DNA from: Hypanus sabinus
Lineage: Eukaryota
DNA: 64,000 nt
Assembly (NCBI RefSeq): GCF_030144855.1
Contig: NC_082736.1
Location: 10,168,001-10,232,000 of the forward strand
Direction: 5' to 3'
Numbering within the stretch: position 1 is the first letter of the stretch; each line of letters opens with the position of its first letter. The notes beneath the pieces are model-generated. The model did not search any database, was not told the DNA's origin, and saw only the letters and a list, made by a program, of their open reading frames with translations. This document shows positions 805-63,659 of this stretch, in pieces. The translations under genes and the position numbers were made by a program.

Positions 805-3800
805 AAGCAGGTGAGAACACGGAGATAGGCTACTCGAACACTGCTACTCCCCCTTCCGCAACGCTTACAAAGAGATCCTTCGCCCAACACCCACCCCGTT
901 TGGATAATCAGATCACTCCTCTATTTCCTGGTGCCAAAGTGCAGGCAGAAGCTGAAACACGAGACGGCCATAGTTAGAAGGGCCCACTGTTGATCCGACT
1001 AATTGGCCTCCATGCGGCAGGACTGCTCCGATGACGTCAACTGCAATGTGTTTCCTGATGAGGACATCTCCGAGTTCACGGAAGGGGTCCGGAAGCGCAT
1101 CGAGGATGTTGTTCCCCAGAAATCAGTCAGGCTCTTCCCAAATCAGAAACTTTTGATCAACATTTCCGTGCAAGAACCATTTACAATAGACAATAGACAA
1201 TAGGTGCAGAAGTAGACCATTCAGCCCCTCGAGTCTGCACCGCCATTCTGAGATCATGGCTGATCATTCACTATCAATACCCAGTCCCTGCCTTGTCCCC
1301 AGATCCCTTGATTCCCCTATCCATCAGATATCTATCGAGCTCCTTCTTGAAAGCATCCAGAGAATTGGCCTCCACCGTCTTCCGAGGCAGTACATTCCAC
1401 ACCTCCACAACTCTCTGGGAGAAGAAGCTCTTCCTCTACTCTGTTTGAAATAACTGACCTCTTATTCGCAATCCATGCCCTCTGGTACTGGACTCTCCCA
1501 ACATCTGGAACATATTTCCTGCCTCAATCCTATCAAATCCTTTAATTATCTTAAACGTTTCAATCAGATCCCCTCTCAATCTCCTCAATTCCAGCGTGTA
1601 CAAGCCCAATCTCTCCAATCTCTCTGCGTAAGGCAGCCCTGCCATCCCAGGAATCAACCTAGTGAATCTACGCTGCACTTCCTCAATTGCCAGAATGTCC
1701 TTCCTTAAACCTGGAGACCAAAACTGTACACAATATTCCAGGTGTGGTCTCACCAGGGCCCTGTACAAATGGAAAAGGACATCCTTGCTCTTGTTTTCAA
1801 TTCCCCTTGTAACAAAGGCCAACATTCCATTTGCCCTCTTCACTGCCTGTTGCACTTGCTCATTCACCTTCGTTGACTGGTGAACTAGGACTCCTAGGTC
1901 TCCTTGCATTTCTCCCATACCTAACTCTACACCGTTCAGACAGTACTCTGCCCTCTTGTTCCTGCTTCCAAAGTGGATAACTTCACATTTATTCACTTTG
2001 AATGACATCTGCCAAGTATCTGCCCACTCACCCAGCCTATCCAAGTCTCCCTGTATTCTCCTAACGTCCTCTTCGCATGTCACACTGCCACCCAGTTTAG
2101 TATCGTCAGCAAACTTGCTGATATAGTTTTCAATGCCCTCATCTAAATCATTGACATAAATCGTAAAGAGCTGTGGTCCCAATACAGAGCCCTGTGGTAC
2201 CCCACTAGTCACCTCCAGCCAGTCCGAGAAACACCCATTCACTGCTACCCTTTGCTTTCTATCTGCCAACTAGTTTTTTATCCATGTTGAAACCCTGCCC
2301 CCAATGCCATGAGCTCTGATTTTACTCACCAATCTCCTATGTGGCACCTTATCGAATGCCTTCTGAAAATCTAGGTATACAACATCCACTGGCTTACCCT
2401 CTTCTTACATCCTTGTTACACCCTCAAAAAACTCCAACAGATTAGTCAAGCATGATTTGCCCTTGGTAAATCCATGCTGGCTCGGCCTAATCCTATTTCT
2501 GCCATCAAGATGTGCCAATATTTCGTCCTTAATAATGGACTCAAGCATCTTCCCCACGACTGACGTTAGGCTAACAGGGCGATAGTTCTCCGTTTTCTCC
2601 TTCCCTCCCTTCTTGAAAAGTGGGACAACATTAGCCACTCTCCAATCTTCAGGAATAGAAGGAACATTGGAAAATGATTACCAATGCATCCGCAATTTCC
2701 TGAGCCACCTTATTTAGAACCCTCGGATGCAGACCATCTGGACCCAGGGATTTATTAGCCTTCAGTCCTACCAGTCTACTCATCACAGTTTCTTTCCTAA
2801 TGTCAATCTGTATCAATTCCTCTGATATCTTATGACCCTGGCCCATCCATACATCTGGGAGATTGCTTGTGTCCTCCCTGGTGAAGACAGATCTAAAGTA
2901 CGCATTAAATTCTGTTGCCATTTCCCTGTTTCCCATAACAATTTCTCCCAATTCATTCTTCAAGGGGCCAACATTGTTCTTAACTATCTTCTTTCTCTTC
3001 ACATAACTAAAAAAAGTTTTTGCTATCCCCTTTTATATTCCTGGCTATACTGAGCTCATACCTGTTTTTTTTTTCTCTCCGTATTGCTTTTTTAGTTAAG
3101 ATCTGCTGTTCCTTAAAACTTTCCCAATCATCTGTATTCCCACTCATCTTAGCTCTGTCATACTTCTTTTTCTTTAATGCTATACAATCTCTGACTTCCT
3201 TTGTCAACAACTCTGGTCCCTTCCCTCTCTTTGAATCCTTCCTTCTCATTGGAATGAACTGCTTTTGCATCTTTTGTATTATCCCCAAGAATATCTGCCA
3301 TTGCTGATCCATTATCTTTCCTACCAGGGCATCCGCCCATTTAACTTTGGCCAGCTCTTCCCTCATGGCTCCGTAGTCTCCTTTATTTAATTGCAACACT
3401 GACACCTCTGATCTGCCCTTATCCCTCTCAAATTGTAGATAAAAACTTATCATGTTATGATCACTACTTCCTAATGGCTCATTTACTTCAAGATCACTGA
3501 TCAATTCCTATTCATTACACATCACCAAGTCCAAAATAGCCTCGTTCCTGGTTGGCTCAAGCACAAGCTGTTCCAAAAATACTTCCCTTAGGCACTCCAC
3601 AAACTCCCTATCCTGGGGTCCAGCACCTACCTGATTCTCCCAGTCCACCTGCATGTTGAAATCTCCCATAACGACTGCATTACCTTTAGCACATGCCAAT
3701 GTTAACTCCCTAATCAACTTGTACCCAATATCCACGCTACTGTTTGGGGGCCTGTACACAACACCCATTAGGGTCTTTTTACCCTTACTGTTCCTCAGCT

Positions 3801-30806: not shown

Positions 30807-33394
30807 CAGGAGTCGGCAACCTTTACCACTGAAAGAGCCATTTGGACCCATTTCCCACAGAAAAGAAAACACTGGGAGCCACAAAACCCATTTGATATTT
30901 AAAATGAGATAACACTGCACACAACGCTTTTTTTGTCTTTATGCTATGTATAAACAAACTATAATGTGTTGCATTTATGAAATTGATAAACTCCTGCAGA
31001 GAAAATGAAATTACATTTCTGCATGCAACAAAAACATTTTGAACTCCGAAAAAAAGACGTTGGGTTGAAGGTTACTTTTAAGTAAAATACTCAGTCTATT
31101 TGAGTCCTTCTTGTATTTATGAAAAACGCCGAACTTAAACTGTCCGCCAGCAGCAAACCAAAAATAACGTCAGCCAGCTGTCACCCTGAAAAATAAAAGG
31201 ACTATTTCACTGAACAATGAAAAAATATGAATATACCTAAAATAATAGGCAATTAAAATATTTATCATACTTGGTTAATGGGATTTCTGCTCCTGGACTT
31301 CAGCGCACAGCGTCTGCACATCAGGGCTATATGACGTCACCTTCATCGCAAGCTGTTATCTGTGAGGCGTGCACGATGTTTGTTTTTAATAAAGTTCATG
31401 TTGGAGAACACCTGCTCACATACATATGTGGATCCAAAGATCGACAGGACTCCAAGCGCATACTTCTTAATGTTTACCTAAGTGTCGGGGATAGCATTCC
31501 ATGTTTCGAACACAAGTTTGTCCGATTTGGAGAGGTTTTCAATATCACTCCATTTGTGATTCTGAGCAAGAACGGACTTCTGACGGGCCACATCTTCAAG
31601 GTCTGCTGTCAAGCGTCTAAACTTGGACACCCATATGTCTTTGTCGGCTATGTCGGCCAGTTCCAGCTCAAGATCAGGTTGACTCACACCTGCCAATGCA
31701 GTCGTATTCAGTTGGGATGGATCGATGCTTAGGGGGTGGCCGGGAAGGATAATGTGTTTTTTTCCTCTCTAAACTCACAGAAGTGTTTCCCAAACGATGC
31801 TTGGATTGCGATGATTGCAGAATGTAATACTCCGAATTAATCATGACGTGAGCATGTTTGAACTCTTTCAAATTGGGGAAGTGAGACAATGTGCCTTTCT
31901 GTAAATCTCTGGCAAGCACTGTGAACTTGCGCTCGAATGCCAAAACATCCTCCAACATGTGCAGGGCTGTGCGTCCTTTCCCCTGAAGAGCTGCGTTCAG
32001 TGTGTTCATGTGCGCTGTCATGTCTACCATGAAGTGTAGCTTTTCCAGCCACACTGGCTGTTCCAGCTCAGAAAAGGTGAGCCTTTGCTGCCCAGGAAAG
32101 TTCTCACTTCTTCTGGACACGCAACAAAGCGTTTCAGCACCTCCCCTCTGCACAGCCACCGGACTTTGTTATGCAGCAGGAGATCAGAATATGCGTTTTC
32201 CAGCTCGTCCAGTAACAAACGGAATTGACGGTGATTTAAACTTTTTGCCATTATTTTATTGACAATCTGAATGACAACATCCATTACTTCTGTGCATTCC
32301 GGAGGAAATGTTTGAGCGCACAGTGCCTCTTGGTGCAAGGTGCTGTGAAAAGTCAGCAGCTTTCTGACCAGCGACTTCTGCAGTAAAGCCACAAATCCCT
32401 TGTGCGCTCCTGTCATACTTGGTGCCCCATCAGTAGCTACTGACACCAGGTGGGTGATCTTTATTCCTTTGGCTCTTAAACAATTCAAGACAGCCTCATA
32501 GATGTCTCCCCCCCCCCCCCCCCGTGTATGGCCTTTTAGAGGCGGTATTTGTTCAATGTCTTTAGACTCGTCACAGGCAATTGAGTAGGCCACAGCTGAA
32601 TTGATGTCTTTAATTTGCTTGTCTTCTGCAATTCTTATGGTTCTGTCTTTGACAGTCTTTGCAGAGAGGGGCATATCCCTGATTTTCTGCACAATTTCAC
32701 TCTTGTTTTTAAAGCCCGTGAATAGATGTTCTGAAATCTTAATGAAAGATTCTTTTATATATTTACCATCTGTAAACTGCTTCCCGTGCCTGACTATTTC
32801 CTGAGCGGCAACAAAACTAGCATATGTAGTTGATTTTCCAGACTTCATCCACTTCTTGAAATGATTTTTGCTCAGATCAACCTTACGCATCAGTTCTGAA
32901 ACGGCTTTTTTTCTCTCATCTCCATCCGGATATTTTTGAGCAAAGGCTGCGTGTTTATTCTGGAAATGTCTTGCGACATTTGACTTTTTGTCATTTGCTA
33001 CTTTCTCATTGCATATTAAGTATACCAGTAAACCAGTCTCGTCAGCAGTGAAAGCAAATGAATCTGCCCACGTATCATTAAACATTATGTTTTCTTCAGT
33101 CACTATTCTTTTTTTAGAATTCTCCATAGTTAGCCTACCTTGGATTGAAAAATTAAAAAAAATCGCGCACTGGCGGGTGTCAGGCATTGGCAGTGGTGAC
33201 GTATATTAATAGCGACAAAAAACACGTTTTATTTAGATTGTACAAGATCACGATAATCTTCAAATTTAGAATTACATTTCAAAAACTAACAAACTAACGT
33301 AAGATACATTTTAATTAAATACTCATCATTTATTTTCCAAAGCCACAGGGAGCCGCAGCACAGAGATGAAAGAGCCGTGGGTTGCCGACCCCTG
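30807..33394 (-). mobile_element. hAT transposon, Buster/Charlie type (GTF2IRD2/ZBED-like transposase), full-length but frameshifted
   Basis: TIRs CAGGAGTCGGCAACCT / GGGTTGCCGACCCCTG. 8-bp TSD TTCTAGGT at 30799-30806 and 33395-33402. Transposase ~33127->31275 with CDES, TDGAPSM, HQEALC, VRWL and FGSTYVCEQVFS motifs. Confidence 0.95.
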
Positions 33395-41313: not shown

Positions 41314-41480
41314 CACACTGTACCAGACAGTGACGGGTACAGAATGAATCCCGCACTCTCACACTGTACTAGAGAGTGACAGGTACTGAATGAACCCCAC
41401 ACTCTCACACTGTACCAGAGACTGACAGATACGGAATGAACCCCCACTTTCACACTCTACCAGAGACAGACGGGTAAAGA
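41314..41480. repeat. 46-bp minisatellite, ~3.6 copies
   Basis: Unit CACACTGTACCAGAGAGTGACGGGTACAGAATGAACCCCACACTCT, tandem with no spacers. Confidence 0.85.
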
Positions 41481-41978
41481 CATTCTGTTGTTTAACAAAC
41501 ATGGACAACCCTCATTACCACCTCAGTAGCACCACTTTGACCACTTCATAATGCAATGGGCTCTTGTTGAAATTCTGCTACCTCTTTATAATTCTGTAGA
41601 GTATGTTTTTATTTTGTAAATGTTGTGTCTCCAATACTGTGTGTCTTTGAATCTGCTGTAAGCCAGTTGTATATAACAATAAACAACTTTCACCCTCACT
41701 CTAAAATGGGTCTCTCATGATGACTTTCGATCTCCTGCTGCCATGTTTCATTACATAAATGTTTCATACTTTCAAGTGTGTGTTTTTCTCATACCTTCTG
41801 CTTTTCTATCAGATACGATAGGTTGAATGGCCGAATACTGCGCCTGTACTTTATGATCCATTTTGTATTTTCGATTTCCTTCCTGCCGAATTACCCAACA
41901 GCGGCAACTCCCAGCGATCAGCGCCAGTTCCCAGTCCACGGTGTTACCCAAAGCGACAATGGGCAGTGGAGAGAGACA

Positions 41979-42221
41979 AAGCAGGTTCACCCCGATACTG
42001 GCATCTCCTCCAAGGCCATGAGCATCATGAACTCGCTCGTGAACAATATCTTCGAGCGTATCGCGGGTGAGGCTTCCCGCCTGGCCCATTACAACAAGTG
42101 GTCAACCATCACTTCCCGGGAGATCCAGACCGCCGTGCACCTGCTGCTGCCCGGGGAGCTGGCCAAGCACGCCGTGTCCGAAGGGACAAAGGCGGTGACC
42201 AAGTACACCAGCTCCAAGTGA
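41979..42221 (+). pseudogene. H2B: Histone H2B pseudogene, 5'-truncated (promoter and first ~44 codons missing)
   Basis: Homology starts abruptly at KQVHPDTG. Substitutions F>L, D>N, R>W, R>H. Confidence 0.9.
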
Positions 42222-42252
42222 AGCTCCCCAGTGAGATGATCGAAAACACAAT

Positions 42253-42292
42253 GGCTCTTTTAAGAGCCACTCACAATTTCAATGAGAGAGTT
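42253..42292 (+). promoter_or_regulatory. Histone 3' stem-loop + HDE
   Basis: Perfect GGCTCTTTTAAGAGCC 42253-42268, then ACTCA and GAGAGAGTT. Confidence 0.9.
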
Positions 42293-42691
42293 GTACTACC
42301 ATTTAGGTAATAAATTATACATATTTTATGTCTGGTGACTTTTACAAGAGCTAAGTCACAGTTGGAATAAACTCCCACTGCACTGAAAAGGAATCGTTAC
42401 CTCCCCCTCCCCATCAGTCCGTCCCACTCTGTATCCACACCACGCAGAGGATTGCTACCATTGTTGTTTTATTTCTGGCTTCAGGAGTTTATTGGTTGCA
42501 GTTGGGTAACACCCGAATCTAATTTTAACACAAGCCTAAAAGATCTCATGACTCTTTCATAGAAAAACTTTTTAAAATTGCAGACTAGACGCTGGTCACA
42601 ATTTGAGAAGCGCCATTTGTCTATAACCTGATAATGTTCACACAGTGACCGACTGTGGGCAGAAGCTGAGGGTCAGTTTTTTTTCGGTTCA

Positions 42692-44089: not shown

Positions 44090-44849
44090 AGCAGCGGGTG
44101 ATTTCCATCCGTTTGATATTCTGTATCTGTCACAGCCTCGACATGTTTCTTCCGGAAGGTAAACCGATATAAGTCTGCACAGAAACTGGTTCGCTTCAGT
44201 CCCGACTCATTTTCTCCCCTCAGCCGGCTGAATGGAGTTCACTCCCTTTGCAGAGTGTCAGCGGATCACTGGGCGCAGGGTCGTGAAATAACCTTTCGGA
44301 GTCAGCCCCGGGAGGGTGAATTTAATCTCCGACCTCTGAACGACTCCGCTCTTGATCACCTAAAACCGCGTTATCTGGGTTCCACATTACGGTTTTACCC
44401 CGGACCGTTCCGGTTTGCAGCGGGTGGGAACATCGCCTGTTTGTTGCTTCATGAGCGATTCCCATCGCCTCACTGAACAATATTTGCGACTTTCATTTCA
44501 AAATCAGGTTTATCACCGGCATGTGACGCGAAATTTGTTAACTTAGCAGCAGCAGTTCAATGCAATTCATAATCTAGTAGAGAGAGAAAAACTAATAGTA
44601 AATAAAACATAAATACACATGTATATTGAATAGATTTTTTTTAATGTGCAAACACAGAAATACTGCAAATTAATGAACGCTGCGTTTATGTGACTCCGCT
44701 CCCTACAGATGTCCTGGGTACTATCAGCAGCTTCTTTCCGTCCTGTGCAGTAGTCCCTCCATACCAGACAGAGATGCAGCCTGTCAGAATGTTCTCCGCG
44801 GTCCGGCTATGGAGTCTACAAAGGCACATTTACCCTGTGAAACTGACGG

Positions 44850-45519
44850 TGTAACGTTCTCCTTTGCGTGTACTAATAACGCCGAATTCAACGTCGAGAT
44901 AAACCAGTCAATGAGACCAGATCGCAGTAAGAATAACCATTTACTGTTCACTCTTCACATTAACATATGGTGAAAACTGTTGATAAACAATACAAGATTG
45001 ATACAGTATTTGTTCCTTCCTTAATATCACATTTCAATTGTAAATACTTGTAAAGGTGGCTATAACTACATTACACTAAGGTGCAGTATACAGGGAGAGT
45101 TTACCTGCTCCATTGACTACTTTAAATACACTTCCATGCAATCTATCCGCAACTCTTTAACTAACGAAAGCATAAACATTATCGACCGTCGTTACTTCTA
45201 ACAGGATCGGCATTAACATCTTAGTTCAATTTATCGATTATCTATTAACTTACAGCGTTGCTCTCACTGTGATTTCTCATGTCTGCAAAGCAACTTCTGC
45301 TCAGGTGTGCCTTGTGGTGAGCCCCCACCCTCGCGCTAATTTCAAACCGGTACTTTCCCACAAGACGCGGCGAAACCGGATGTGACGTCATCGCATGCCG
45401 ATATATTTTACATGCAATGAATATACTTTAAACACTTCTAATTCTAACTAGAAAATACTATCGAATGAATTACTAAGCAAAAATATTATAAACTAAATAA
45501 CTGTCGTAAAGACAGCACA
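44850..45519 (-). repeat. 3' LTR of BEL element (670 bp)
   Basis: TGTAAC...GCACA; direct repeat of 48751-49421, about 14 differences by eye. Confidence 0.95.
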
Positions 45520-45577
45520 CTCCCCGCTTGACCTTCGTAAGGTCACAATGAGCAGAGTACAAAACTTAGTCTCTTAA

Positions 45578-48500
45578 TCAGTCATTGGGTAGAAGTAGAA
45601 TAACTTCTGTAACTGGCCTTTGGTAAATTTTCACATCGCCTTGGTCGGTAGTCTTCAATTCGATCTTCCTGACATGTCCATCCCCACTAGGGAATGTAGC
45701 AGTGATTCTGGCCGTTGGCCAGCTGTTGCGGGCGATTTGCTTGTCCCTGAGCAGGACTAAGTCTCCAACTTGAAGATTCCTGCGGGGTTCTGTCCACTTT
45801 TGTCTCTGTTGCAACAAAGGTAGATATTTTTGTCTCCAGCGAGACCAGAGCTGATTTGCCAGAGCCTGGACTTGTCTCCATTGCTTTGTGTACAAATCCT
45901 TGTCTGAGAAGTCTCCTGGTGGAGGAGGTGTTCCTGCCTTCTGTGTAGGGAGCATTGATGGCGAAAGTATGAAGGGGTTTTCTGGGTCAGAAGGCACAGG
46001 TAGGAGTGGTTGTGCGTTTATAATGGCTGTGACCTCTGCCATTAGGGTGCACAGTACCTCGTGGGTCAATCGGGTGCGTTGCTGCATCTCAGGTTTCCTT
46101 TTCCGGGTTTTCCGTAAGGACGTGAACCATTTGACTGCCTGCTCTTTGTTATCTGGTGAGCACTGGCGTGGTTCTCTGAAAGGCAATGGGGCAAACCCAT
46201 TATTTGCTTCATCTCTGAAGACCTTGGGGTCCTTTGTTTTTAAAGAAATGGCATCTTGAGCTGATTGTGCAAGTTTATTTCCGTGCTCGGTTTGAACGAA
46301 AACTGACTGACCTAGCGTCTCGTCGGTTACTTTACGATTGTTAACGTCTTGTTGTGCTTCCTTGATATACATGGAACTTGTGCAGAGTTGAAAAATCGAA
46401 TGGCGGCCACTCTCGAGCACATTGGTCTTGAGTGTGTCAACCGTCGGTTTGTGTAAGTCACCGGGGCACACCTCTCCTATCACCACCCAGCCCAGATCCA
46501 GACGTTGCGCGAAGGGGGCGTCGAGTGGTCCATTGACCTGCTGCCTAACCTTGTGTACCTGGATAACATCTCTTCCTAATAGCAGGAGTATTTCCGCTTT
46601 TGGATCCAGTTCTGGGATGTGTTTGGCGATGTGGTGGAGATGTGGCTGGTGTAGCACCGTACTTGGTGTCGGGATCCCAGTGCGGTTATTCATGATTCCA
46701 TCGCACTCTAAGAGTGGAGGGAGACAGATGATGACTTTACCATCCAGGGACTCGATCTGGATGCCCTCTGCCTTCCTTCCTTGGGTTTCCATGTTGCCTG
46801 AGCAAGTTTTGAGGTAGTATGGGAACCGCTCACTCTCAATGTTGAACAATTTAAAGAACTCTGGACTGACTAGTGAGCGATTGCTCTGATCGTCCAGAAT
46901 CACATAGGCTTTGATGGCCTTGTCTTTGGCTCCTTTAGGGTACACCTTAGTGAGGCAGATCTTGGAACAAGAACGGCTTGACTGAGCTTGACCGCAAACT
47001 TCTGTACAGTTCGAGCTGACAATTGTTGTCCTGGAGTGAGCCTCTCCCTCCCTGCCGTCCTGTTGTGGGGGTGAAGGAGCGTTGTCGGTTTGCGGTGGAC
47101 AATCCTTGCTAGGGTCGTTGCTAGTTGTAAGGGCTTCGGTCTTGAGCACTGAGATGGGTTTATCAATGTTGAAAACATTCGAAGAGGATCTACTTGGCTT
47201 GGTGTAAATTGTACTGCTTCCTGGACCCGCGAGGCTAGGGTCGTTTTGCTTCTTCACCTCTCTGCACACAAACCTAGCGAGGAGCTCAAAGGGAGGAAAT
47301 TGATCATCGTGCTCTTCCTTGTAATCTAAAGCAATGGACAGCCACCTGTCCTGCAGCCCAAAAGGAAGTTTGTCCACGACTTGTCTAATCCCGAATGAAG
47401 TATCTAGGTATACTAGACCAGCTGAGTAGCCATCTTCTTTGGTGCCTTGGATCTCCATGAGTACATTTCCGAATTCTCTTAACTTAATGTGATCTTTGGC
47501 TGACACCTTAGGAAAGTTTTCCAGACGTCGATATAGCGCCACTTCAATAGTTTCGGGGGACCCATAGTCCTCCCGAATTCTCTCCCACGCTTTGCTTAAG
47601 GCTAGTTCGGGTTTGTTGATGTACACTGAACGTATGCGTCTCACCTGGTCGCGTGATTCTTTCCCCAGCCATTTCGCCATAAGGTCCAACCTTTGGGTTG
47701 CACTGAGCTGGACTCCGTCGATCGCGTTGGTGAATGTGGAGTACCATGCACGGTAATTTTCAGGTTTATCGTCAAACTGGTACAGTCCCAAAGTGACGAG
47801 ATCCCGTCGTGCTAAATACTGCATCATGGGATCGGCTGTAAGCGGCATGCGGGCTGGAGAAGTACGTTGGCGTCTATATGACTGAGAGCGTACGTTTCTC
47901 ATGGAATTTGCCATCCTGGATTCGACCTCCGCGTCTCTTCGCATCAAACTTTGTAAGTTTGGTGTCAAGAAGTATCGGTTGTCAGCTCTTTCATTCTTGA
48001 ATTCATCACGGAGTCGCGAGGGTAAATTTTCTTCCTCGTATGGATGTGATGCAATCGTGTCTCTCTGAGGTTCCTCGTAGCTGGGGAAGTTATCGAATAT
48101 GTATGGAGAGGGGAGACGAGCCTGCCTGTCTATTTGAGATTGTACATAGTCGCTTGTGCGTTCCAGTCTGGTCCTTTCTAAAGTAGATCTTACTTCGGTC
48201 AGATCACGCGACCCTTCAGCTTCTTCTATGTACTCTGCTTCCGCCATGGCAGCTTCTTCTTCTCTTTCTAGCTGCAGCACTTGCAACTCTGTCAATATTT
48301 TTGCCATTTCCAACAGGGTTTCGGCTTCTCTGGCGGCCTCTGCTCTTTGTCTGGCGGCCCTTTCGGCTTCTCTGTCGGCCTCTGCTCTTTGTCTGGCGGC
48401 CCTTTCGGCTTCTCTGGCAGCCTTTTCTTTCTGGATTTTGGCTTCTCTGGTGGCCTGTTTCAGTTTCAAAACTGCTTCTTGTCTGGCGTAACGCAGTCGC

Positions 48501-48712
48501 ACCTTGGCGGCTTCTGCCTTGGCTCTTGCCTGGGTGGACTTACTTGATGTCGCTCTACTGCCCTTGTCGCTGGGCGCCATCGACTTGATCCCGGATCGAG
48601 CTGACATTGCAGCACTTGGAACACCTGATAACGCCTGGGTGGGCTTACTTGATGTCGGTTTACTGCCCTTGTCGCTGGGCGGCGTCGACTTGATCCCGGA
48701 TCGAGCTGACAT
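45578..48712 (-). CDS. BEL/Pao Gag-protease-integrase C-terminal fusion polyprotein (no RT/RNase H)
   Basis: Coiled-coil N-terminus; Gag core FDDKPENYRAW; protease AYVILDDQSNRSL...LLLGRD; APLPFR; then directly LTHEVLCTLMAEVTAIINAQPL and a DUF5641-like WRQVQ...VGDLVLL...DGHVRK...RPVTEV. Confidence 0.9.
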   Translation of the reverse strand: MSARSGIKSTPPSDKGSKPTSSKPTQALSGVPSAAMSARSGIKSMAPSDKGSRATSSKSTQARAKAEAAKVRLRYARQEAVLKLKQATREAKIQKEKAAREAERAARQRAEADREAERAARQRAEAAREAETLLEMAKILTELQVLQLEREEEAAMAEAEYIEEAEGSRDLTEVRSTLERTRLERTSDYVQSQIDRQARLPSPYIFDNFPSYEEPQRDTIASHPYEEENLPSRLRDEFKNERADNRYFLTPNLQSLMRRDAEVESRMANSMRNVRSQSYRRQRTSPARMPLTADPMMQYLARRDLVTLGLYQFDDKPENYRAWYSTFTNAIDGVQLSATQRLDLMAKWLGKESRDQVRRIRSVYINKPELALSKAWERIREDYGSPETIEVALYRRLENFPKVSAKDHIKLREFGNVLMEIQGTKEDGYSAGLVYLDTSFGIRQVVDKLPFGLQDRWLSIALDYKEEHDDQFPPFELLARFVCREVKKQNDPSLAGPGSSTIYTKPSRSSSNVFNIDKPISVLKTEALTTSNDPSKDCPPQTDNAPSPPQQDGREGEAHSRTTIVSSNCTEVCGQAQSSRSCSKICLTKVYPKGAKDKAIKAYVILDDQSNRSLVSPEFFKLFNIESERFPYYLKTCSGNMETQGRKAEGIQIESLDGKVIICLPPLLECDGIMNNRTGIPTPSTVLHQPHLHHIAKHIPELDPKAEILLLLGRDVIQVHKVRQQVNGPLDAPFAQRLDLGWVVIGEVCPGDLHKPTVDTLKTNVLESGRHSIFQLCTSSMYIKEAQQDVNNRKVTDETLGQSVFVQTEHGNKLAQSAQDAISLKTKDPKVFRDEANNGFAPLPFREPRQCSPDNKEQAVKWFTSLRKTRKRKPEMQQRTRLTHEVLCTLMAEVTAIINAQPLLPVPSDPENPFILSPSMLPTQKAGTPPPPGDFSDKDLYTKQWRQVQALANQLWSRWRQKYLPLLQQRQKWTEPRRNLQVGDLVLLRDKQIARNSWPTARITATFPSGDGHVRKIELKTTDQGDVKIYQRPVTEVILLLPND

Positions 48713-48750
48713 TGCAGCACTTGAAACACCTGATAATGCCGCTTTTTCAC

Positions 48751-49421
48751 TGTAACGTTCTCCTTCGCGTGTACTAATAACGCCAAATTCAACGTCGAGA
48801 TAAACCAGTCAATGAGACCAGATCGCAGTAAGAATAACCATTTACTGTTCACTCTTCACATTAACATATGGTGAAAACTGTTGATAAAACAATACAAGAT
48901 TGATACAGTATTTGTTCCTTCCTTAATATCACATTTCAATTGTAAATACTTGTAAAGGTGACTATAACTACATTACACTAAGGTGCAGTATACAGGGAGA
49001 GTTTACCTGCTCCATTGACTACTTTAAATACACTTCCATGCAAACTATCCGCAACTCTTTAACTAACGAAAGCATAAACATTATCGACCGTCGTTACTTC
49101 TAACAGGATCGGCATTAACATCTTAGTTCAATATATCGATTATCTATTAACTTACAGCGTTGCTCTCACTGTGATTTCTCATGCCTGCAAAACAACTTCT
49201 GCTCAGGTGTGCCTCGTGGTGAGCCCCCACCCTCGCGTTAATTTCAAACCGGTACTTTCCCACAAGACGCGGCGAAACCGGATGTGATGTAATCGCATGC
49301 CGATATATTTTACATGCAATGAATATACTTTAAACACTTCTAATTCTAACTAGAAAATACTATCGAATGAATTACTAAGCAAAAATATTATAAACTAAAT
49401 GACTGTCGTAAAGACAGCAAA
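48751..49421 (-). repeat. 5' LTR of BEL element (671 bp)
   Basis: Direct repeat of 44850-45519; terminal C>A change at 49420. Confidence 0.95.
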
Positions 49422-51289
49422 AACGGTATCAATTGAAAAAAAAACTCGTCCTCCACAGCCTCTGAATATAAATGAACAGTTTGCGAAAGCAACGGTCAGT
49501 TTGGTCAGATCTCCCGAGAGGCTCCTTGTGTGAGGACGTCTGAGATCAGACTTTGGTTTGTGCAGGGTGGGTGGATCCAGTTCTTCAGCACCGTAGTACC
49601 AGTCACTTCTCTACAAATTCCTGAGTCTGTCTAATACTTCCCTGAATACCCCTGTGCTCTCTGCCTCTGCCACCACACCTGACAGTGCAATCCAAATCCC
49701 CACCACTGCTTTCTTCACATTCTTCCTCCGATCTTAAATACATGTTTTCTTCTAGAAGACATTTCACCCCTGCGAAAAATATTAGACTGTCCTTGTAAAT
49801 GTCACCTCTGGAGCAGAAGAGGTTCCAATGATCCAGAATCCTGAAACACTTTCCCTGCACCAGCTCCTCAGTCACTCACCAGCACTCCAGCCGTCCCAGT
49901 CAACATGATGTAATTTGTAATGACCCTCTATTACAACCCTATTGAGTCCTCTAATTCCTGCTGACTGTTTGATGTCCTATAATACAATCCATGAGAGAAT
50001 TCATTCCCCTGTGCTCTCTGCCACCACCCCTGACAGTGCATTCTGTCCCCATTTCTCTCTTTCCTTCACTTTCTTCCTCTGACCTTAAACACATGCCTTC
50101 TAGTAGAAGACATTTCACTCCTGTGAAAAATATTACTGGCTGTCTACACTAACTATGACAAGCAGGCTTTTATAATCTTCTATAAAATTTCTTCTGAGCC
50201 AATGCCATCAGATGAAAAGGTTCCAGCATGTCCACCCTCTCCTCACCACACACCTCCTCCAGACATCCTGGTAAACCCTGTCTGCCCCTGCTCCTGAACC
50301 TCCACATGCTTCCACATACAGTGTTCAGTACACTGTACTCTCACTGTGGCCTAGCCAGCATTTTGTAAACCTGTAACATTATATCCTGGTGTTTGAACTC
50401 AATGCCTTGTCTGATGAAGGCAAACATGCCGTACACCGACTTTTCCTCCCTGTCAACCTGTGCTCACAGTCAATCTCAACATCCTTCTCTTTGCCAATAC
50501 TATTCATGTTCCTACAATTAACTGTGTACCCACCCTTAATGTTGGATCTCCCAAAATGCACCCCTGGGCATCCTTTTCAGCAGAATGAATGTCAGAATGC
50601 AATGGGATTATCATTAATTCTACTCGCCAGAGATTTTTCATCATTGTTTCTAGCTCTCGAAATGTTCTTGAGTTCCCTTCTGTTTTTTAAATATAGTCCT
50701 CAAACACCCTGGTTGATTCCAGCTTCCTAAGCCTTACATATGCTTCTCACTCTTCACTGACAAAATGTGCTTCCTCTCTCATCATCCAAGGTTCCTGAAC
50801 CTTGTCATCCTTGACCCTCCCTCTTACTGGAACAAACTGGCCCTGAAACACTGTGCAGCTGATCTTTAAACAAAATCATGTCAGATGTGTATTTGTCTCA
50901 AAATCAATCCTTACAGTGCTAAGCATTAAATTTAGCTTCAATCTCTCCATTCAGTGACTGGTGTTCTGGTTCACATCCCCGTCAATCTAATTTCAACCCT
51001 CTCAGGGAGCAGCAATAAACCTCATGATACAGACCCCCCTCCAGTGAAGGTGCAAGCCATCCCTCTTGTAAATGTCACCTCTGCACCAGAAGAGGTTCCA
51101 ATGTTCTGGAATCCTGAAACCCTGTCCCTGGACCAGCACCTCAGCCACACATTCATCTGCTCTAACTTTCTGTCCCTAACACCACTACCACACAGCATGG
51201 GGAGTAACCGGGTGATTACAACCTTTCAGGTCCTGCCCGTCAACTTGTTCCCTGACTCTCTATATTCACTGTAGGATCTCATCCCTTTT

Positions 51290-62254: not shown

Positions 62255-62917
62255 ATGACCGAGACAGCACCCGCCGAAACGGCTCCTCCAGCCGCACCCG
62301 CCGCCGCAAAGAAGACTCCCAAGAAGAAGGCGGCTGCCCGGAGCAAACCAACCGGTCCCTCGCTGGGCGAACAGATCGATAAGATCGTGGCGGGTTGTCA
62401 CGATAGGAAGGGTATGTCCGGTGCGGCCATCATGAAGGCTCTGGTTGACAGCGGTGTCGATGTGGTGAAACGTCGCCCCCAGATCAAGATGAGCATCAAG
62501 AGGAAAGTGGAAAGCGGCTCCTTGGTTCAGATGAAGGGTTCTGGTCTTTCGGGATCCTTTAAATCCGGTAAAGGGAAAAGTGCCGTGAAGGTGGTGAAGA
62601 AAGCGAAGAAGCCATCGGCAAAGAAATCTCCAAACAAGAAATCTCCCAGCAAGAAGCCTGGCGCCAAGAAACCAGCGGCTAAAAAAGCGGGAGGTAAGAA
62701 ACCAGCGACTAAGAAAGCGGCAGCAAATAAACCCGCGGCTAAGAAAGCGGCAGCTAAGAAACCCGCGGCTAAGAAAGCGGCAGCTAAGAAACCAGCGGCT
62801 AAGAAAGCGGCGCCGAAGCCCAAGAGCCCCAAGAAAGCTGCAGCCCCGAAGACGAAGGCGGCCAAGAAGCCGAAGTCGAAATCCGCGAAACCCAAGAAGA
62901 CAGCAGTCAAAAAGTGA
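62255..62917 (+). CDS. H1: Histone H1 (220 aa), replication-dependent linker histone
   Basis: MTETAPAE..; winged-helix globular domain ending GSLVQMKGSGLSGSFK; K/A/P-rich tail with (S/T)PxK motifs; perfect stem-loop downstream. Confidence 0.95.
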   Translation: MTETAPAETAPPAAPAAAKKTPKKKAAARSKPTGPSLGEQIDKIVAGCHDRKGMSGAAIMKALVDSGVDVVKRRPQIKMSIKRKVESGSLVQMKGSGLSGSFKSGKGKSAVKVVKKAKKPSAKKSPNKKSPSKKPGAKKPAAKKAGGKKPATKKAAANKPAAKKAAAKKPAAKKAAAKKPAAKKAAPKPKSPKKAAAPKTKAAKKPKSKSAKPKKTAVKK

Positions 62918-62954
62918 ATTGAGAATCCACCATATGTAACTATCTGAACCCAAC

Positions 62955-62992
62955 GGCTCTTCTCAGAGCCACCCACATCTCAGAAAAGAGCT
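62955..62992 (+). promoter_or_regulatory. Histone 3' stem-loop + HDE of H1
   Basis: GGCTCTTCTCAGAGCC 62955-62970, ACCCA, AAAAGAGCT. Confidence 0.93.
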
Positions 62993-63659
62993 GATTCAAA
63001 GTGTTGTGATTCCCGTCCCGGGTCTGACTGAGCTTTCCGGGGGAACTTCTCACATAGAACCGGAGATTGACGGTACCTGACATATGGTGCGGCCGTGCCG
63101 AATCAGTGTCTGAAATGAGACACGGATGCCCGAGCTGAGATTGGGAGATAAGGGATGTGGGCAGTTTTTGGCCCAATTCCTTCTCCGATGCCGGGAGAGA
63201 GTGACTGAGACATTGACAGCAGCGGAGATTCAGCTGAGTTGATTGGGAACTGCTGAAACCTACGCGAGAGGGGAGGGGGCGTGTTGAGAGAGGGATCCGT
63301 CTCTGGGACGGACTGCAGCGAGAGGATATATGATAAACTACCCGGTGGCATTGCCGACTGACCTTCATGCAGGCCCCAGCTACAAAACTACATTGTTAAT
63401 TTACACAAAACACCAATAACAAAAATGTACAAGAGAATGAAATCTAATTTAAAAAATCACTATTTCCTGGTAGTCACCGCCCCCCCCCGAAATCCCTCAC
63501 TATACCCCTCGCGTCGGCATGCTCCACTCCAAGCACAGCGGAGACGAACGTATCCCCATGTCCAAAGCAAACAAAACGGTAACAGCCGCACCAGCTGTAC
63601 ATGACAGGTTTGTGGGAGAAGTGAAGGGCCAGATGAGACCCTGACAGGGAGGGAAGCGC

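What the first reader, a model, noticed from the sequence alone, without database searches (positions are those of the whole stretch)
44850..49421. Young BEL/Pao element with a streamlined, still-open Gag-PR-IN(C-terminal) ORF: a possible capsid-providing parasite lineage
Seen: LTRs are ~98% identical and one uninterrupted 1044-codon ORF fills almost the whole 3.2-kb interior. Known: BEL/Pao polyproteins run Gag(CCHC knuckles)-PR-RT-RH-IN. Here the protein jumps from the pre-RT region (KPEMQQ) straight to the end of the integrase core (RTRLTHEVL, junction ~46077-46085). The Gag knuckles also look excised (DPSKDCP|PQTD, ~47096-47101); no CCHC motif remains. Both losses keep the frame. Inference: the source element was under selection to keep making Gag+PR while borrowing RT/IN in trans. 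Domestication is less likely. An open ORF at ~1% post-insertion divergence is not itself proof of selection on this copy.
Basis: partly seen in the sequence, partly recalled or inferred. Interest (0 to 1): 0.72.

Follow-up and report, generated by a model that had tools for sequence, protein, structure and literature searches.

The report
Stingray BEL/Pao element lacking RT and integrase
This is one decaying copy of a stingray family of BEL/Pao retrotransposons that lost reverse transcriptase, RNase H and the integrase core in a single old in-frame deletion and must be copied by a complete relative; the extra loss of the zinc knuckles was found only in this copy.

Summary
Two LTRs (44850-45517, 48751-49419) differ by 12 substitutions and 1 indel. 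They flank one 1044-codon minus-strand ORF (45578-48712).

**What the ORF keeps:** a helical N-terminus, a capsid-fold Gag core, a retropepsin-fold protease, the pre-RT linker and the integrase C-terminal domain (DUF5641).

**What it lacks:** RT, RNase H, the integrase core and both zinc knuckles.

**The RT-to-integrase deletion is not private.** 61 predicted proteins of two stingrays (Hypanus sabinus, Hemitrygon akajei) carry the same junction, and a single origin is not rejected.

**Selection acts on the lineage, not this copy.** Differences between its old sub-lineages avoid sites invariant in autonomous relatives (rate ratio 0.35). Changes private to single copies, this one included, do not (0.85; window 1.2).

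**The knuckle deletion is private.** No other protein has it.

**Gag and protease are dispensable in cis.** Abundant H. sabinus forms also lack the Gag core, and many lack the protease too, yet stay in frame. "Selected to make Gag+PR" is therefore only partly supported.

**Limits:** the tool that fetches DNA of other copies was closed. I could not compare LTRs with a partner or compute dN/dS.

**Verdict:** a new animal member of the known semi-autonomous LTR-element kind.

The parts
44840..44849 (.). Left flank AAACTGACGG. It may be an imperfect target-site duplication.
   Evidence: The right flank reads AAAACGG, the same string but for a 3-nt CTG indel. No clean 4-6 bp duplication.
44850..45517 (-). 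3' LTR of the minus-strand element (668 nt)
   Evidence: Differs from the other LTR by 12 substitutions and 1 indel. TG...CA ends.
45518..45530 (-). Putative polypurine tract next to the 3' LTR (minus strand ...AAGCGGGGAGTG)
   Evidence: Inferred from position and composition only.
45581..46078 (-). Integrase C-terminal remnant (aa 879-1044): last helices of the core plus DUF5641. The stop codon is at 45578-45580.
   Evidence: Pfam DUF5641 at aa 943-1040, E 1.9e-26. Aligns to the C-terminus of full-length relatives. No solved structure matches by sequence.
46076..46084 (-). Junction 1 (Q877 Q878 | R879): the site of the RT / RNase H / integrase-core deletion (about 870 aa)
   Evidence: Full-length relatives read ...PEMQQQY... 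and ...FLQQRTRL..., so Gln-Gln stands at both edges. The junction is shared by 61 stingray proteins.
46079..46465 (-). Pre-RT linker (aa 750-878). It carries W839G, the one change shared by the whole deleted lineage.
46466..46978 (-). Retropepsin-fold protease (aa 579-749). The motifs LDDQS (D607) and LLGRD (711-715) are invariant in 62 relatives.
   Evidence: AlphaFold2 core pLDDT above 90. All 50 listed PDB matches are retroviral proteases, E from 2e-3, probability 1.00. Invariant columns. Not found by Pfam.
46955..47008 (-). Conserved four-cysteine cluster C569, C573, C582, C586 (CX3CX8CX3C) upstream of the protease
   Evidence: C569, C573 and C582 are invariant and C586 nearly so (90% or more) in 62 sequences. 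Function unknown.
47093..47098 (-). Junction 2 (P539 | P540): the site of the 70-aa in-frame deletion that removes both zinc knuckles
   Evidence: Seen in no other protein.
47246..47830 (-). Gag capsid-like core (aa 295-489), eleven helices
   Evidence: AlphaFold2 mean pLDDT 86. Best PDB matches are PNMA2 capsids 8uyo and 8rb3, probability 1.00 and 0.99. Arc, copia, BLV, MLV, Ty1 and HIV capsids come lower. Pfam DUF1759 scores 19.1 bits, below its 25.4-bit cut-off.
47993..48712 (-). Gag N-terminus (aa 1-240): Ser/Lys-rich start, then an Ala/Glu/Arg-rich helical region with 21/42-nt repeats (48319-48427)
   Evidence: Also present in teleost full-length relatives. The coiled coil is inferred from composition only.
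48528..48740 (-). 105-nt tandem duplication that repeats the start codon, giving two in-frame ATGs (M1 and M36)
   Evidence: H. sabinus proteins share it; Hemitrygon proteins do not.
48713..48750 (-). 38-nt leader between the 5' LTR and the ATG, where a primer-binding site would be expected
   Evidence: No TGG-type site. No match to the window's tRNA-Asp. No self-complement longer than 8 nt in the LTR.
48751..49419 (-). 5' LTR of the minus-strand element (669 nt)
49420..49426 (.). Right flank AAAACGG

Best explanation
The window holds one insertion of a non-autonomous (semi-autonomous) BEL/Pao LTR retrotransposon family of dasyatid stingrays.

Origin. A complete stingray BEL/Pao element lost RT, RNase H and the integrase core (zinc finger and DDE) in one in-frame deletion between two Gln-Gln sites. 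The autonomous H. sabinus protein P0054 resembles that parent. The deleted lineage then spread and diversified in Hypanus and Hemitrygon.

How it works. Its RNA, made from the 5' LTR, encodes a fusion of Gag, protease, pre-RT linker and the integrase C-terminal domain. It can be reverse-transcribed and integrated only by enzymes supplied in trans by a complete relative (inferred).

Selection. Along the lineage the remaining ORF evolved under purifying selection (shown at protein level). So the product, or the ability to be translated to the native stop, mattered for spread. After insertion, copies decay neutrally.

This copy. The window copy carries a further 70-residue in-frame deletion that removes both zinc knuckles. 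That deletion was found nowhere else. The copy's private changes look neutral. It is most likely a dead-end copy whose ORF is still open because the copy is fairly young.
For: - Anatomy.
- Relatives: the nearest are ~1050-1130 aa H. sabinus and H. akajei proteins with Pfam DUF5641 only, in clusters of 47 and 32 members.
- Shared junction: the alignment shows junction 1 in all of them, and full-length relatives fill the gap with RT, RNase H and integrase. In a motif census, 61 stingray proteins carry junction 1 and none of them has an RT or integrase-core motif.
- Single origin: the stingray sequences form one clade (support 100/99). The AU test does not reject one clade for all 32 junction-1 rows; the constrained tree scores 5.2 log-likelihood units better, p-AU 0.58. 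One shared change, W839G, marks the lineage.
- Age: H. sabinus also holds a member (P0022) of the Hemitrygon-type sub-lineage.
- Constraint: fixed differences between the two old sub-lineages number 22 at outgroup-invariant sites and 146 at variable sites, rate ratio 0.35, p 1.7e-6. Private changes number 46 and 124, ratio 0.85, not significant. Variants shared by several copies give 0.44-0.6; singletons give about 0.8-1.0.
- Window copy: 11 private changes at invariant sites and 21 at variable sites, ratio 1.2. The chance of no stop codon arising from neutral substitutions at the LTR-derived divergence is 0.31.
- Folds: retropepsin and capsid.
Against: - There is no codon-level dN/dS, no LTR/PBS comparison with a partner and no copy census in the source genome.
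- The constraint test is at protein level. Recombination with autonomous elements could import already-selected variation.
- In the unconstrained tree P0054 nests among the junction-1 sequences (support 93/81).
- Forms lacking the Gag core, and forms also lacking the protease, spread too. The selected feature may therefore not be Gag or protease activity.
- The protease has DDQ where retropepsins have D[ST]G. This is normal for the whole clade, autonomous members included, and activity is untested.
- There is no clean target-site duplication and no recognisable primer-binding site.
- Only one autonomous stingray protein was found, and it is N-terminally truncated.
Confidence: 0.75

Rival explanations
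1. Loss of RT/integrase and loss of the zinc knuckles are both adaptive streamlining of a lineage selected to supply capsid and protease while borrowing the enzymes.
For: Both deletions are in frame. Capsid and protease folds are retained. There is lineage-level constraint.
Against: - The knuckle deletion is absent from all 75 related stingray proteins.
- The window copy shows no constraint.
- Sister forms lacking the Gag core and the protease are at least as numerous among annotated H. sabinus proteins.
- A Gag without knuckles would be expected to package RNA poorly (established knowledge of retroelement nucleocapsids).
Confidence: 0.12
2. The ORF is kept open by youth and by repeated recombination with autonomous elements, or by selection only for translation through to the native stop (for example to avoid nonsense-mediated decay). 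It is not kept open by any activity of the Gag-PR-integrase-tail protein itself.
For: - Forms with and without the Gag core intermingle in the protease-to-C-terminus tree, for example P0014 with P0226 at 100/99 support. This fits frequent recombination.
- Every lineage-defining deletion seen is in frame: junction 1, KNER|TDNAP, VYPK|EAQQ and a 31-aa Hemitrygon deletion.
- All forms keep only the two ends in common.
- The chance of an open frame under neutral substitutions is 0.31.
Against: - Depletion of changes at conserved residues (0.35) is seen inside Gag, the protease and the integrase tail alike. Selection for read-through alone does not predict that.
- Finding copies through predicted proteins favours in-frame forms.
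Confidence: 0.25
3. Private random decay or assembly collapse of an ordinary complete BEL/Pao copy.
For: The knuckle deletion is unique so far. The flanks lack a clean duplication.
Against: Junction 1 recurs in 61 proteins from two independently assembled genomes. The deleted stretch is not repetitive. The ORF reads straight through both junctions.
Confidence: 0.03
4. A domesticated Gag-derived host gene, like PNMA or Arc.
For: The best fold match of the Gag core is the PNMA2 capsid. The ORF is open.
Against: Both LTRs are intact. There are dozens of paralogous copies on many chromosomes. Change after insertion looks neutral.
Confidence: 0.02

Closest known systems
BEL/Pao (Belpaoviridae) LTR retrotransposons of fishes, for example the full-length 1.9-kaa polyproteins of catfish and zebrafish (P0121, P0122) and H. 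sabinus P0054
   Same: LTRs with TG...CA ends. The same Gag N-terminus, capsid core, four-cysteine cluster, LDDQS/LLGRD protease, pre-RT linker and DUF5641 tail. Shared parts are 56-87% identical.
   Different: RT, RNase H, the integrase zinc finger and the DDE core are missing. In this copy the zinc knuckles are missing too. It cannot copy itself.
TR-GAG and GAG/PROT-only non-autonomous ('semi-autonomous') LTR retrotransposons of plants (PMC13570524 and the work it cites)
   Same: LTR elements that keep a gag ORF, or gag plus protease, sometimes with decayed pieces of integrase. They lack the enzymes and depend on complete elements.
   Different: Those belong to Ty1/copia and Ty3/gypsy in plants. 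This one is BEL/Pao in a cartilaginous fish. It keeps the integrase C-terminal domain fused in frame, and it has a nested series of further in-frame deletion forms.
Defective-interfering-type deletion derivatives of viruses and retroviruses
   Same: Nested internal deletions that keep both ends of the genome, arise at short sequence matches and spread with a helper.
   Different: These are germ-line copies that persist across genera. Interference with the helper is untested.
Domesticated capsid genes (PNMA2, Arc)
   Same: The Gag core has a two-lobed all-helical capsid fold.
   Different: Here the LTRs are intact, there are many copies, and change after insertion is neutral. It is not a host gene.

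Membership tests
BEL/Pao LTR retrotransposon | Two long terminal repeats with TG...CA ends around one coding interior | tested here: met
BEL/Pao LTR retrotransposon | Polyprotein homologous to BEL/Pao Gag-Pol; nearest full-length relatives carry Peptidase_A17 (PF05380), rve and DUF5641 | tested here: met
   Placed inside a clade of such proteins with support 100/99.
BEL/Pao LTR retrotransposon | C-terminal DUF5641 domain of the integrase | tested here: met
   E 1.9e-26, 92.6 bits against a 23.1-bit cut-off
BEL/Pao LTR retrotransposon | Gag with DUF1759-type capsid region | tested here: inconclusive
   Pfam gives 19.1 bits, below the 25.4-bit cut-off. The fold is capsid-like: PNMA2 probability 1.00, E 0.03.
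BEL/Pao LTR retrotransposon | CCHC-type zinc knuckles in Gag | tested here: not met
   No motif is left. Relatives have two in the 70 residues missing here.
BEL/Pao LTR retrotransposon | Aspartic protease | tested here: met
   Retropepsin fold. Invariant D607 and LLGRD. The motif is DDQ rather than D[ST]G throughout the clade. Activity is not testable here.
BEL/Pao LTR retrotransposon | Reverse transcriptase, RNase H and integrase catalytic core in the order PR-RT-RH-IN | tested here: not met
   No RVT, rve or PF05380 match. About 870 aligned residues are absent. No other long frame in the interior. So it is a derivative, not a complete member.
BEL/Pao LTR retrotransposon | Short target-site duplication and a tRNA primer-binding site | tested here: inconclusive
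   The flanks match only across a 3-nt indel. No TGG-type site in the 38-nt leader.
Semi-autonomous (TR-GAG-like) non-autonomous LTR retrotransposon | Keeps a gag ORF but lacks the replication enzymes | tested here: met
Semi-autonomous (TR-GAG-like) non-autonomous LTR retrotransposon | The deletion is shared by many copies, showing the deleted form itself spreads | tested here: met
   Junction 1 is in 61 proteins of two species, and one origin is not rejected. Junction 2 is not shared by any.
Semi-autonomous (TR-GAG-like) non-autonomous LTR retrotransposon | A complete partner with matching LTR, PBS and PPT in the same genome | not testable with these tools
Only a protein-level candidate exists: P0054, 92% identical in the integrase tail and 76% in the pre-RT linker.
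Semi-autonomous (TR-GAG-like) non-autonomous LTR retrotransposon | Purifying selection on the retained ORF | tested here: inconclusive
   The protein-level proxy is positive for the lineage (0.35, p 1.7e-6) and negative for this copy. Codon-level dN/dS was not possible.
Domesticated Gag gene (PNMA/Arc type) | LTRs lost, single orthologous locus, constraint on the copy itself | tested here: not met
   LTRs intact. Dozens of copies. Private changes look neutral.

The most novel reading that the evidence does not exclude
The junction-1 lineage may be a long-lived, selection-maintained parasite of a complete BEL/Pao element. Its successive forms lost the zinc knuckles, then the Gag core, then the protease, always in frame. 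That pattern would show that spread depends on translating a minimal protein, the helical Gag N-terminus fused to the integrase C-terminal domain, through to the native stop. The reason could be that this protein acts in cis on its own RNA or on the helper's integration complex, or that read-through protects the RNA from decay. The lineage may also descend from an element that entered rays from teleosts by horizontal transfer.
Probability: 0.2. Interest if true: 0.65.

Novelty: new member of a known kind. Interest (0 to 1): 0.4.

Why it matters
Non-autonomous LTR elements that keep gag, or gag plus protease, are documented mainly in plants. I found no paper describing one for BEL/Pao or for cartilaginous fishes.

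Two annotated stingray genomes list dozens of these copies as "uncharacterized", "plectin-like" or "myosin-9-like" genes. Recognising the family would clean up those annotations.

The nested in-frame series offers a natural deletion map of what a BEL/Pao RNA needs in cis and what it can borrow.

For this single copy, the practical message is that it is an ordinary decaying insertion.

Tried and rejected
This ruled out DNA of other copies, LTR comparison with a partner, junction microhomology at DNA level in undeleted relatives, and dN/dS.
- Scans of viral contigs and metagenome contigs with the ORF found no relative. The one JGI member of a related cluster (P0257) is an unrelated 46-aa peptide.
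- Pfam gave no protease family even at E up to 1, so the protease was tested by fold instead.
- I considered that the KNER|TDNAP and VYPK|EAQQ "deletions" in H. sabinus proteins are introns in gene models. The equivalent window sites have no GT...AG, so I treat them as real deletions, with that caveat.
- Exact look-up of the window's H1 histone and of the ORF found neither in the protein collection.
- The search for a primer-binding site, self-priming complement, TATA box or AATAAA in the LTR and leader found nothing clear.
- A sequence search of solved structures with the integrase tail found nothing.
- I did not use the large representative protein search or the third word search, because the protein was not left open.
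The consensus lines that the alignment tools print were not used. Nothing in the window looked human.

Full report
**Observation**

The repeat finder, a pairwise alignment and a self-BLAST all show two direct repeats, at 44850-45517 and 48751-49419. They differ by 12 substitutions (9 transitions, 3 transversions) and one single-base indel, giving 98.06% identity and a K2P distance of 0.0182. They begin with TG and end with CA. No other copy lies in the window.

Between the repeats runs one minus-strand ORF, 45578-48712, of 1044 codons. No other long frame exists in the interior.

- A purine-rich run abuts the 3' LTR.
- The leader between the 5' LTR and the ATG is only 38 nt and has no recognisable tRNA primer site.
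- The flanks read AAACTGACGG on the left and AAAACGG on the right. These are the same string apart from a 3-nt indel, so there is no clean target-site duplication.

**What the ORF contains**

Pfam reports only DUF5641 (aa 943-1040, E 1.9e-26) and a sub-threshold DUF1759 match (aa 314-418). It reports no RT, RNase H, integrase core, protease or zinc-knuckle family.

I aligned the ORF with full-length relatives: teleost polyproteins of 1.6-1.9 kaa and the H. sabinus protein P0054. The ORF matches them from the Gag N-terminus to ...KPEMQQ. It then resumes at RTRLTHEVL, where the relatives read ...FLQQRTRLTHEVL. About 870 residues are skipped: RT, RNase H, the integrase zinc finger and the DDE core. 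Gln-Gln stands at both edges in the full-length proteins. This points to a deletion at a short sequence match, though that is inferred from protein only.

A second gap of 70 residues (DCP|PQTD) removes two knuckles, CX2CX5HX4C and CX2CX4HX4H, which all aligned relatives that span this region keep. Both gaps are in frame.

Two folds were tested.

- **Protease (aa 560-800).** The model is confident, with core pLDDT above 90. All 50 listed PDB matches are retroviral proteases (HIV-1, HIV-2, XMRV, HTLV), with E from 2e-3 and probability 1.00. The motifs LDDQS (D607 invariant) and LLGRD are conserved in 62 relatives, complete ones included. DDQ in place of D[ST]G is therefore normal for this clade and not decay.
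- **Gag core (aa 285-540).** The model is an eleven-helix domain with mean pLDDT 86. Its best matches are PNMA2 capsids (probability 1.00 and 0.99, E 0.03-0.1). Arc, copia, BLV, MLV, Ty1 and HIV capsids come further down. This is modest but coherent support for a capsid.

**Relatives and the two deletions**

The word search found its best matches in two stingrays. They include many ~1050-1130 aa proteins that carry DUF5641 only, in 90%-identity clusters of 47 members (Hypanus sabinus) and 32 members (Hemitrygon akajei).

A motif census of 75 stingray proteins gave these results:

- 61 carry junction 1.
- None of those 61 has an RT or integrase-core motif.
- Only P0054 has RT and integrase.
- None has junction 2.

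A second search with P0054 returned no other stingray protein among the 120 best hits.

So the RT-to-integrase deletion defines a multi-copy lineage in at least two genera. The knuckle deletion is private to the window copy as far as the data reach. Unannotated copies, and proteins shorter than 574 aa, would have been missed.

The census also revealed further forms in H. sabinus. Nine proteins have junction 1 plus a deletion KNER|TDNAP that removes the whole Gag core and the knuckles. Twenty-one more lack the protease as well (VYPK|EAQQ). All keep the frame. These forms are known only from gene models. The equivalent window sites lack GT...AG, so I take them as real deletions, with that caveat.

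**Phylogeny**

I built a maximum-likelihood tree on the 404 columns shared with P0054 (protease C-terminal part, pre-RT linker and integrase tail).

- All stingray sequences form one clade (support 100/99).
- That clade nests inside teleost elements. It is sister to a carp/catfish plus medaka/killifish group, with tuna, cod, sturgeon and a starfish element outside.
- In the free tree P0054 sits among the junction-1 sequences (93/81).
- The AU test does not reject one clade for all 32 junction-1 rows. The constrained tree is in fact 5.2 log-likelihood units better (p-AU 0.58).
- One change, W839G, is shared by the junction-1 lineage (at least 90% of its rows). Tryptophan stands at that site in 13 of 13 outgroups and in P0054.
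- An H. sabinus fragment (P0022) groups with the Hemitrygon sub-lineage. The sub-lineages therefore predate, or have crossed, the species split.
- The window copy's nearest relative in this region is P0009 (93%), a form without the Gag core.
- Region by region, no annotated protein is more than about 96% identical to the window copy, and its Gag core is at best 89.6% identical to any.
- The window's H1 histone is not in the protein collection either. The source is probably an unannotated ray close to Hypanus.

**Selection**

Without DNA of other copies I used a protein-level proxy. Sites were classed by 13 complete non-stingray relatives as invariant (247 sites) or variable (567 sites).

| Class of change | At invariant sites | At variable sites | Rate ratio |
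|---|---|---|---|
| Private to single junction-1 copies | 46 | 124 | 0.85 (not different from 1) |
| Fixed between the Hemitrygon-type and Hypanus-type sub-lineages | 22 | 146 | 0.35 (p 1.7e-6 against site numbers; p 0.0017 against private changes) |

Depletion at invariant sites was seen in Gag, in the protease/linker and in the integrase tail. Variants shared by several copies gave ratios of 0.44-0.6, against about 0.8-1.0 for singletons in most subsets.

This is the pattern expected if the propagating lineage is under purifying selection and inserted copies then decay neutrally.

The window copy itself has 11 private changes at invariant sites and 21 at variable sites, a ratio of 1.2. Under neutral substitutions at half the LTR distance, the ORF would escape a stop codon with probability 0.31. 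Indels would lower this further.

Two caveats apply to the proxy. Recombination with complete elements could import selected variation. And copies found through predicted proteins are biased towards open frames.

**Mechanism**

The following is shown:

- The element is a BEL/Pao derivative that lacks every enzyme needed for reverse transcription and integration.
- It keeps a capsid-fold Gag core, a retropepsin-fold protease and the integrase C-terminal domain in one frame.
- The main deletion is old and lineage-wide.

The following is inferred:

- Its RNA is packaged, copied and integrated by proteins of a complete relative of the P0054 type.
- Its own polyprotein, or the act of translating it to the native stop, contributes to spread.

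Forms lacking the Gag core, the knuckles and the protease have also multiplied. Gag and protease are therefore not needed in cis. What all forms share is only the first ~240 and last ~300 codons, the region where cis-acting RNA signals would also lie.

The knuckle-less window copy would be expected to bind RNA poorly. It is best read as one more deletion derivative, and possibly a dead end.

Dating depends on an assumed rate. At 1 to 2.5 × 10^-9 substitutions per site per year, a K2P distance of 0.018 means roughly 4-9 million years. That is an inference, not a measurement.

**Comparison with known kinds**

The element is a BEL/Pao derivative but fails the RT, RNase H and integrase-core features of a complete member.

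It works like the semi-autonomous TR-GAG and GAG/PROT-only non-autonomous LTR families described in plants. [quoted passage not shown]

I found no description of such a BEL/Pao family, or of one in rays, in the held literature. The large BEL/Pao survey (PMC3118150) does not mention non-autonomous forms.

It is not a domesticated gene.

**Limits**

- A bench mobilisation test is referred.

**Verdict**

The element is a new animal member of a known kind. Interest is moderate, and rests mainly on the family and its nested in-frame series rather than on this copy.

Noticed in passing
Proteins P0054, P0121, P0122: The one complete-type stingray protein (H. sabinus P0054) is 79% identical over 1273 aa to a catfish element and 78% to a zebrafish one. 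The stingray clade nests inside teleost elements (100/99), and a starfish element is 64% identical. Average similarity within BEL/Pao superfamilies is 37-64% (PMC3118150). This suggests horizontal transfer between bony fishes and rays (context: PMC7070016).
   Followed up: partly
H. sabinus proteins P0008-P0015 and P0019-P0042: There are nested further deletion forms of the same family. KNER|TDNAP removes the Gag core and knuckles; VYPK|EAQQ also removes the protease. All are in frame. NCBI names many of them plectin-like, myosin-9-like, intersectin-like or GYF-like because of the helical N-terminus. Forms with and without the Gag core intermingle in the tree, which suggests recombination.
   Followed up: partly
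window 48528-48740 and 48319-48427: A 105-nt tandem duplication repeats the start codon, giving M1 and M36. H. sabinus copies share it; Hemitrygon copies do not. 21/42-nt repeats expand the Ala/Glu/Arg-rich helical region, and their number varies widely among copies.
   Followed up: partly
window 46955-47008 (aa 569-586): A CX3CX8CX3C cysteine cluster lies just upstream of the protease. It is conserved in all 62 relatives aligned (three cysteines invariant, the fourth in at least 90%). It survives although the classical knuckles are gone. Its function is unknown.
   Followed up: no
window 46892-46906 (aa 603-607 region, LDDQS): The whole fish/ray BEL/Pao clade, complete members included, has D-D-Q where retropepsins have D-S/T-G.
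   Followed up: partly
window 62255-62917 (+) and 62950-62993: An intact linker histone H1 gene (220 aa) with a histone 3' stem-loop. A 30-nt tandem repeat (62666-62844) encodes its Lys/Ala-rich tail. The exact protein is not in the protein collection.
   Followed up: partly
window 41778-42293 (+): Only the C-terminal half of a core histone (H2B-like) is readable, followed by a histone 3' stem-loop at 42248-42293. It is probably a truncated pseudogene. A 46-nt tandem repeat lies upstream (41314-41480). The BEL/Pao copy therefore sits inside a histone gene cluster.
   Followed up: partly
window 18996-19069 (+): tRNA-Asp (GTC), found by both ARAGORN and Rfam.
   Followed up: no
window 1436-2269 (-) and 15299-16201 (-): Fragments of non-LTR (LINE-type) reverse transcriptase ORFs (RVT_1, with an ALKBH8_N-type segment).
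   Followed up: no
window 32024-33187 (-): A 387-aa ATG ORF whose only Pfam match is a weak one to the Spin-doc zinc finger (E 0.0034). Its nature is unknown.
   Followed up: no
window 49710-50135: Two 75-nt copies, 85% alike and 351 nt apart, lie just outside the element's right flank.
   Followed up: no
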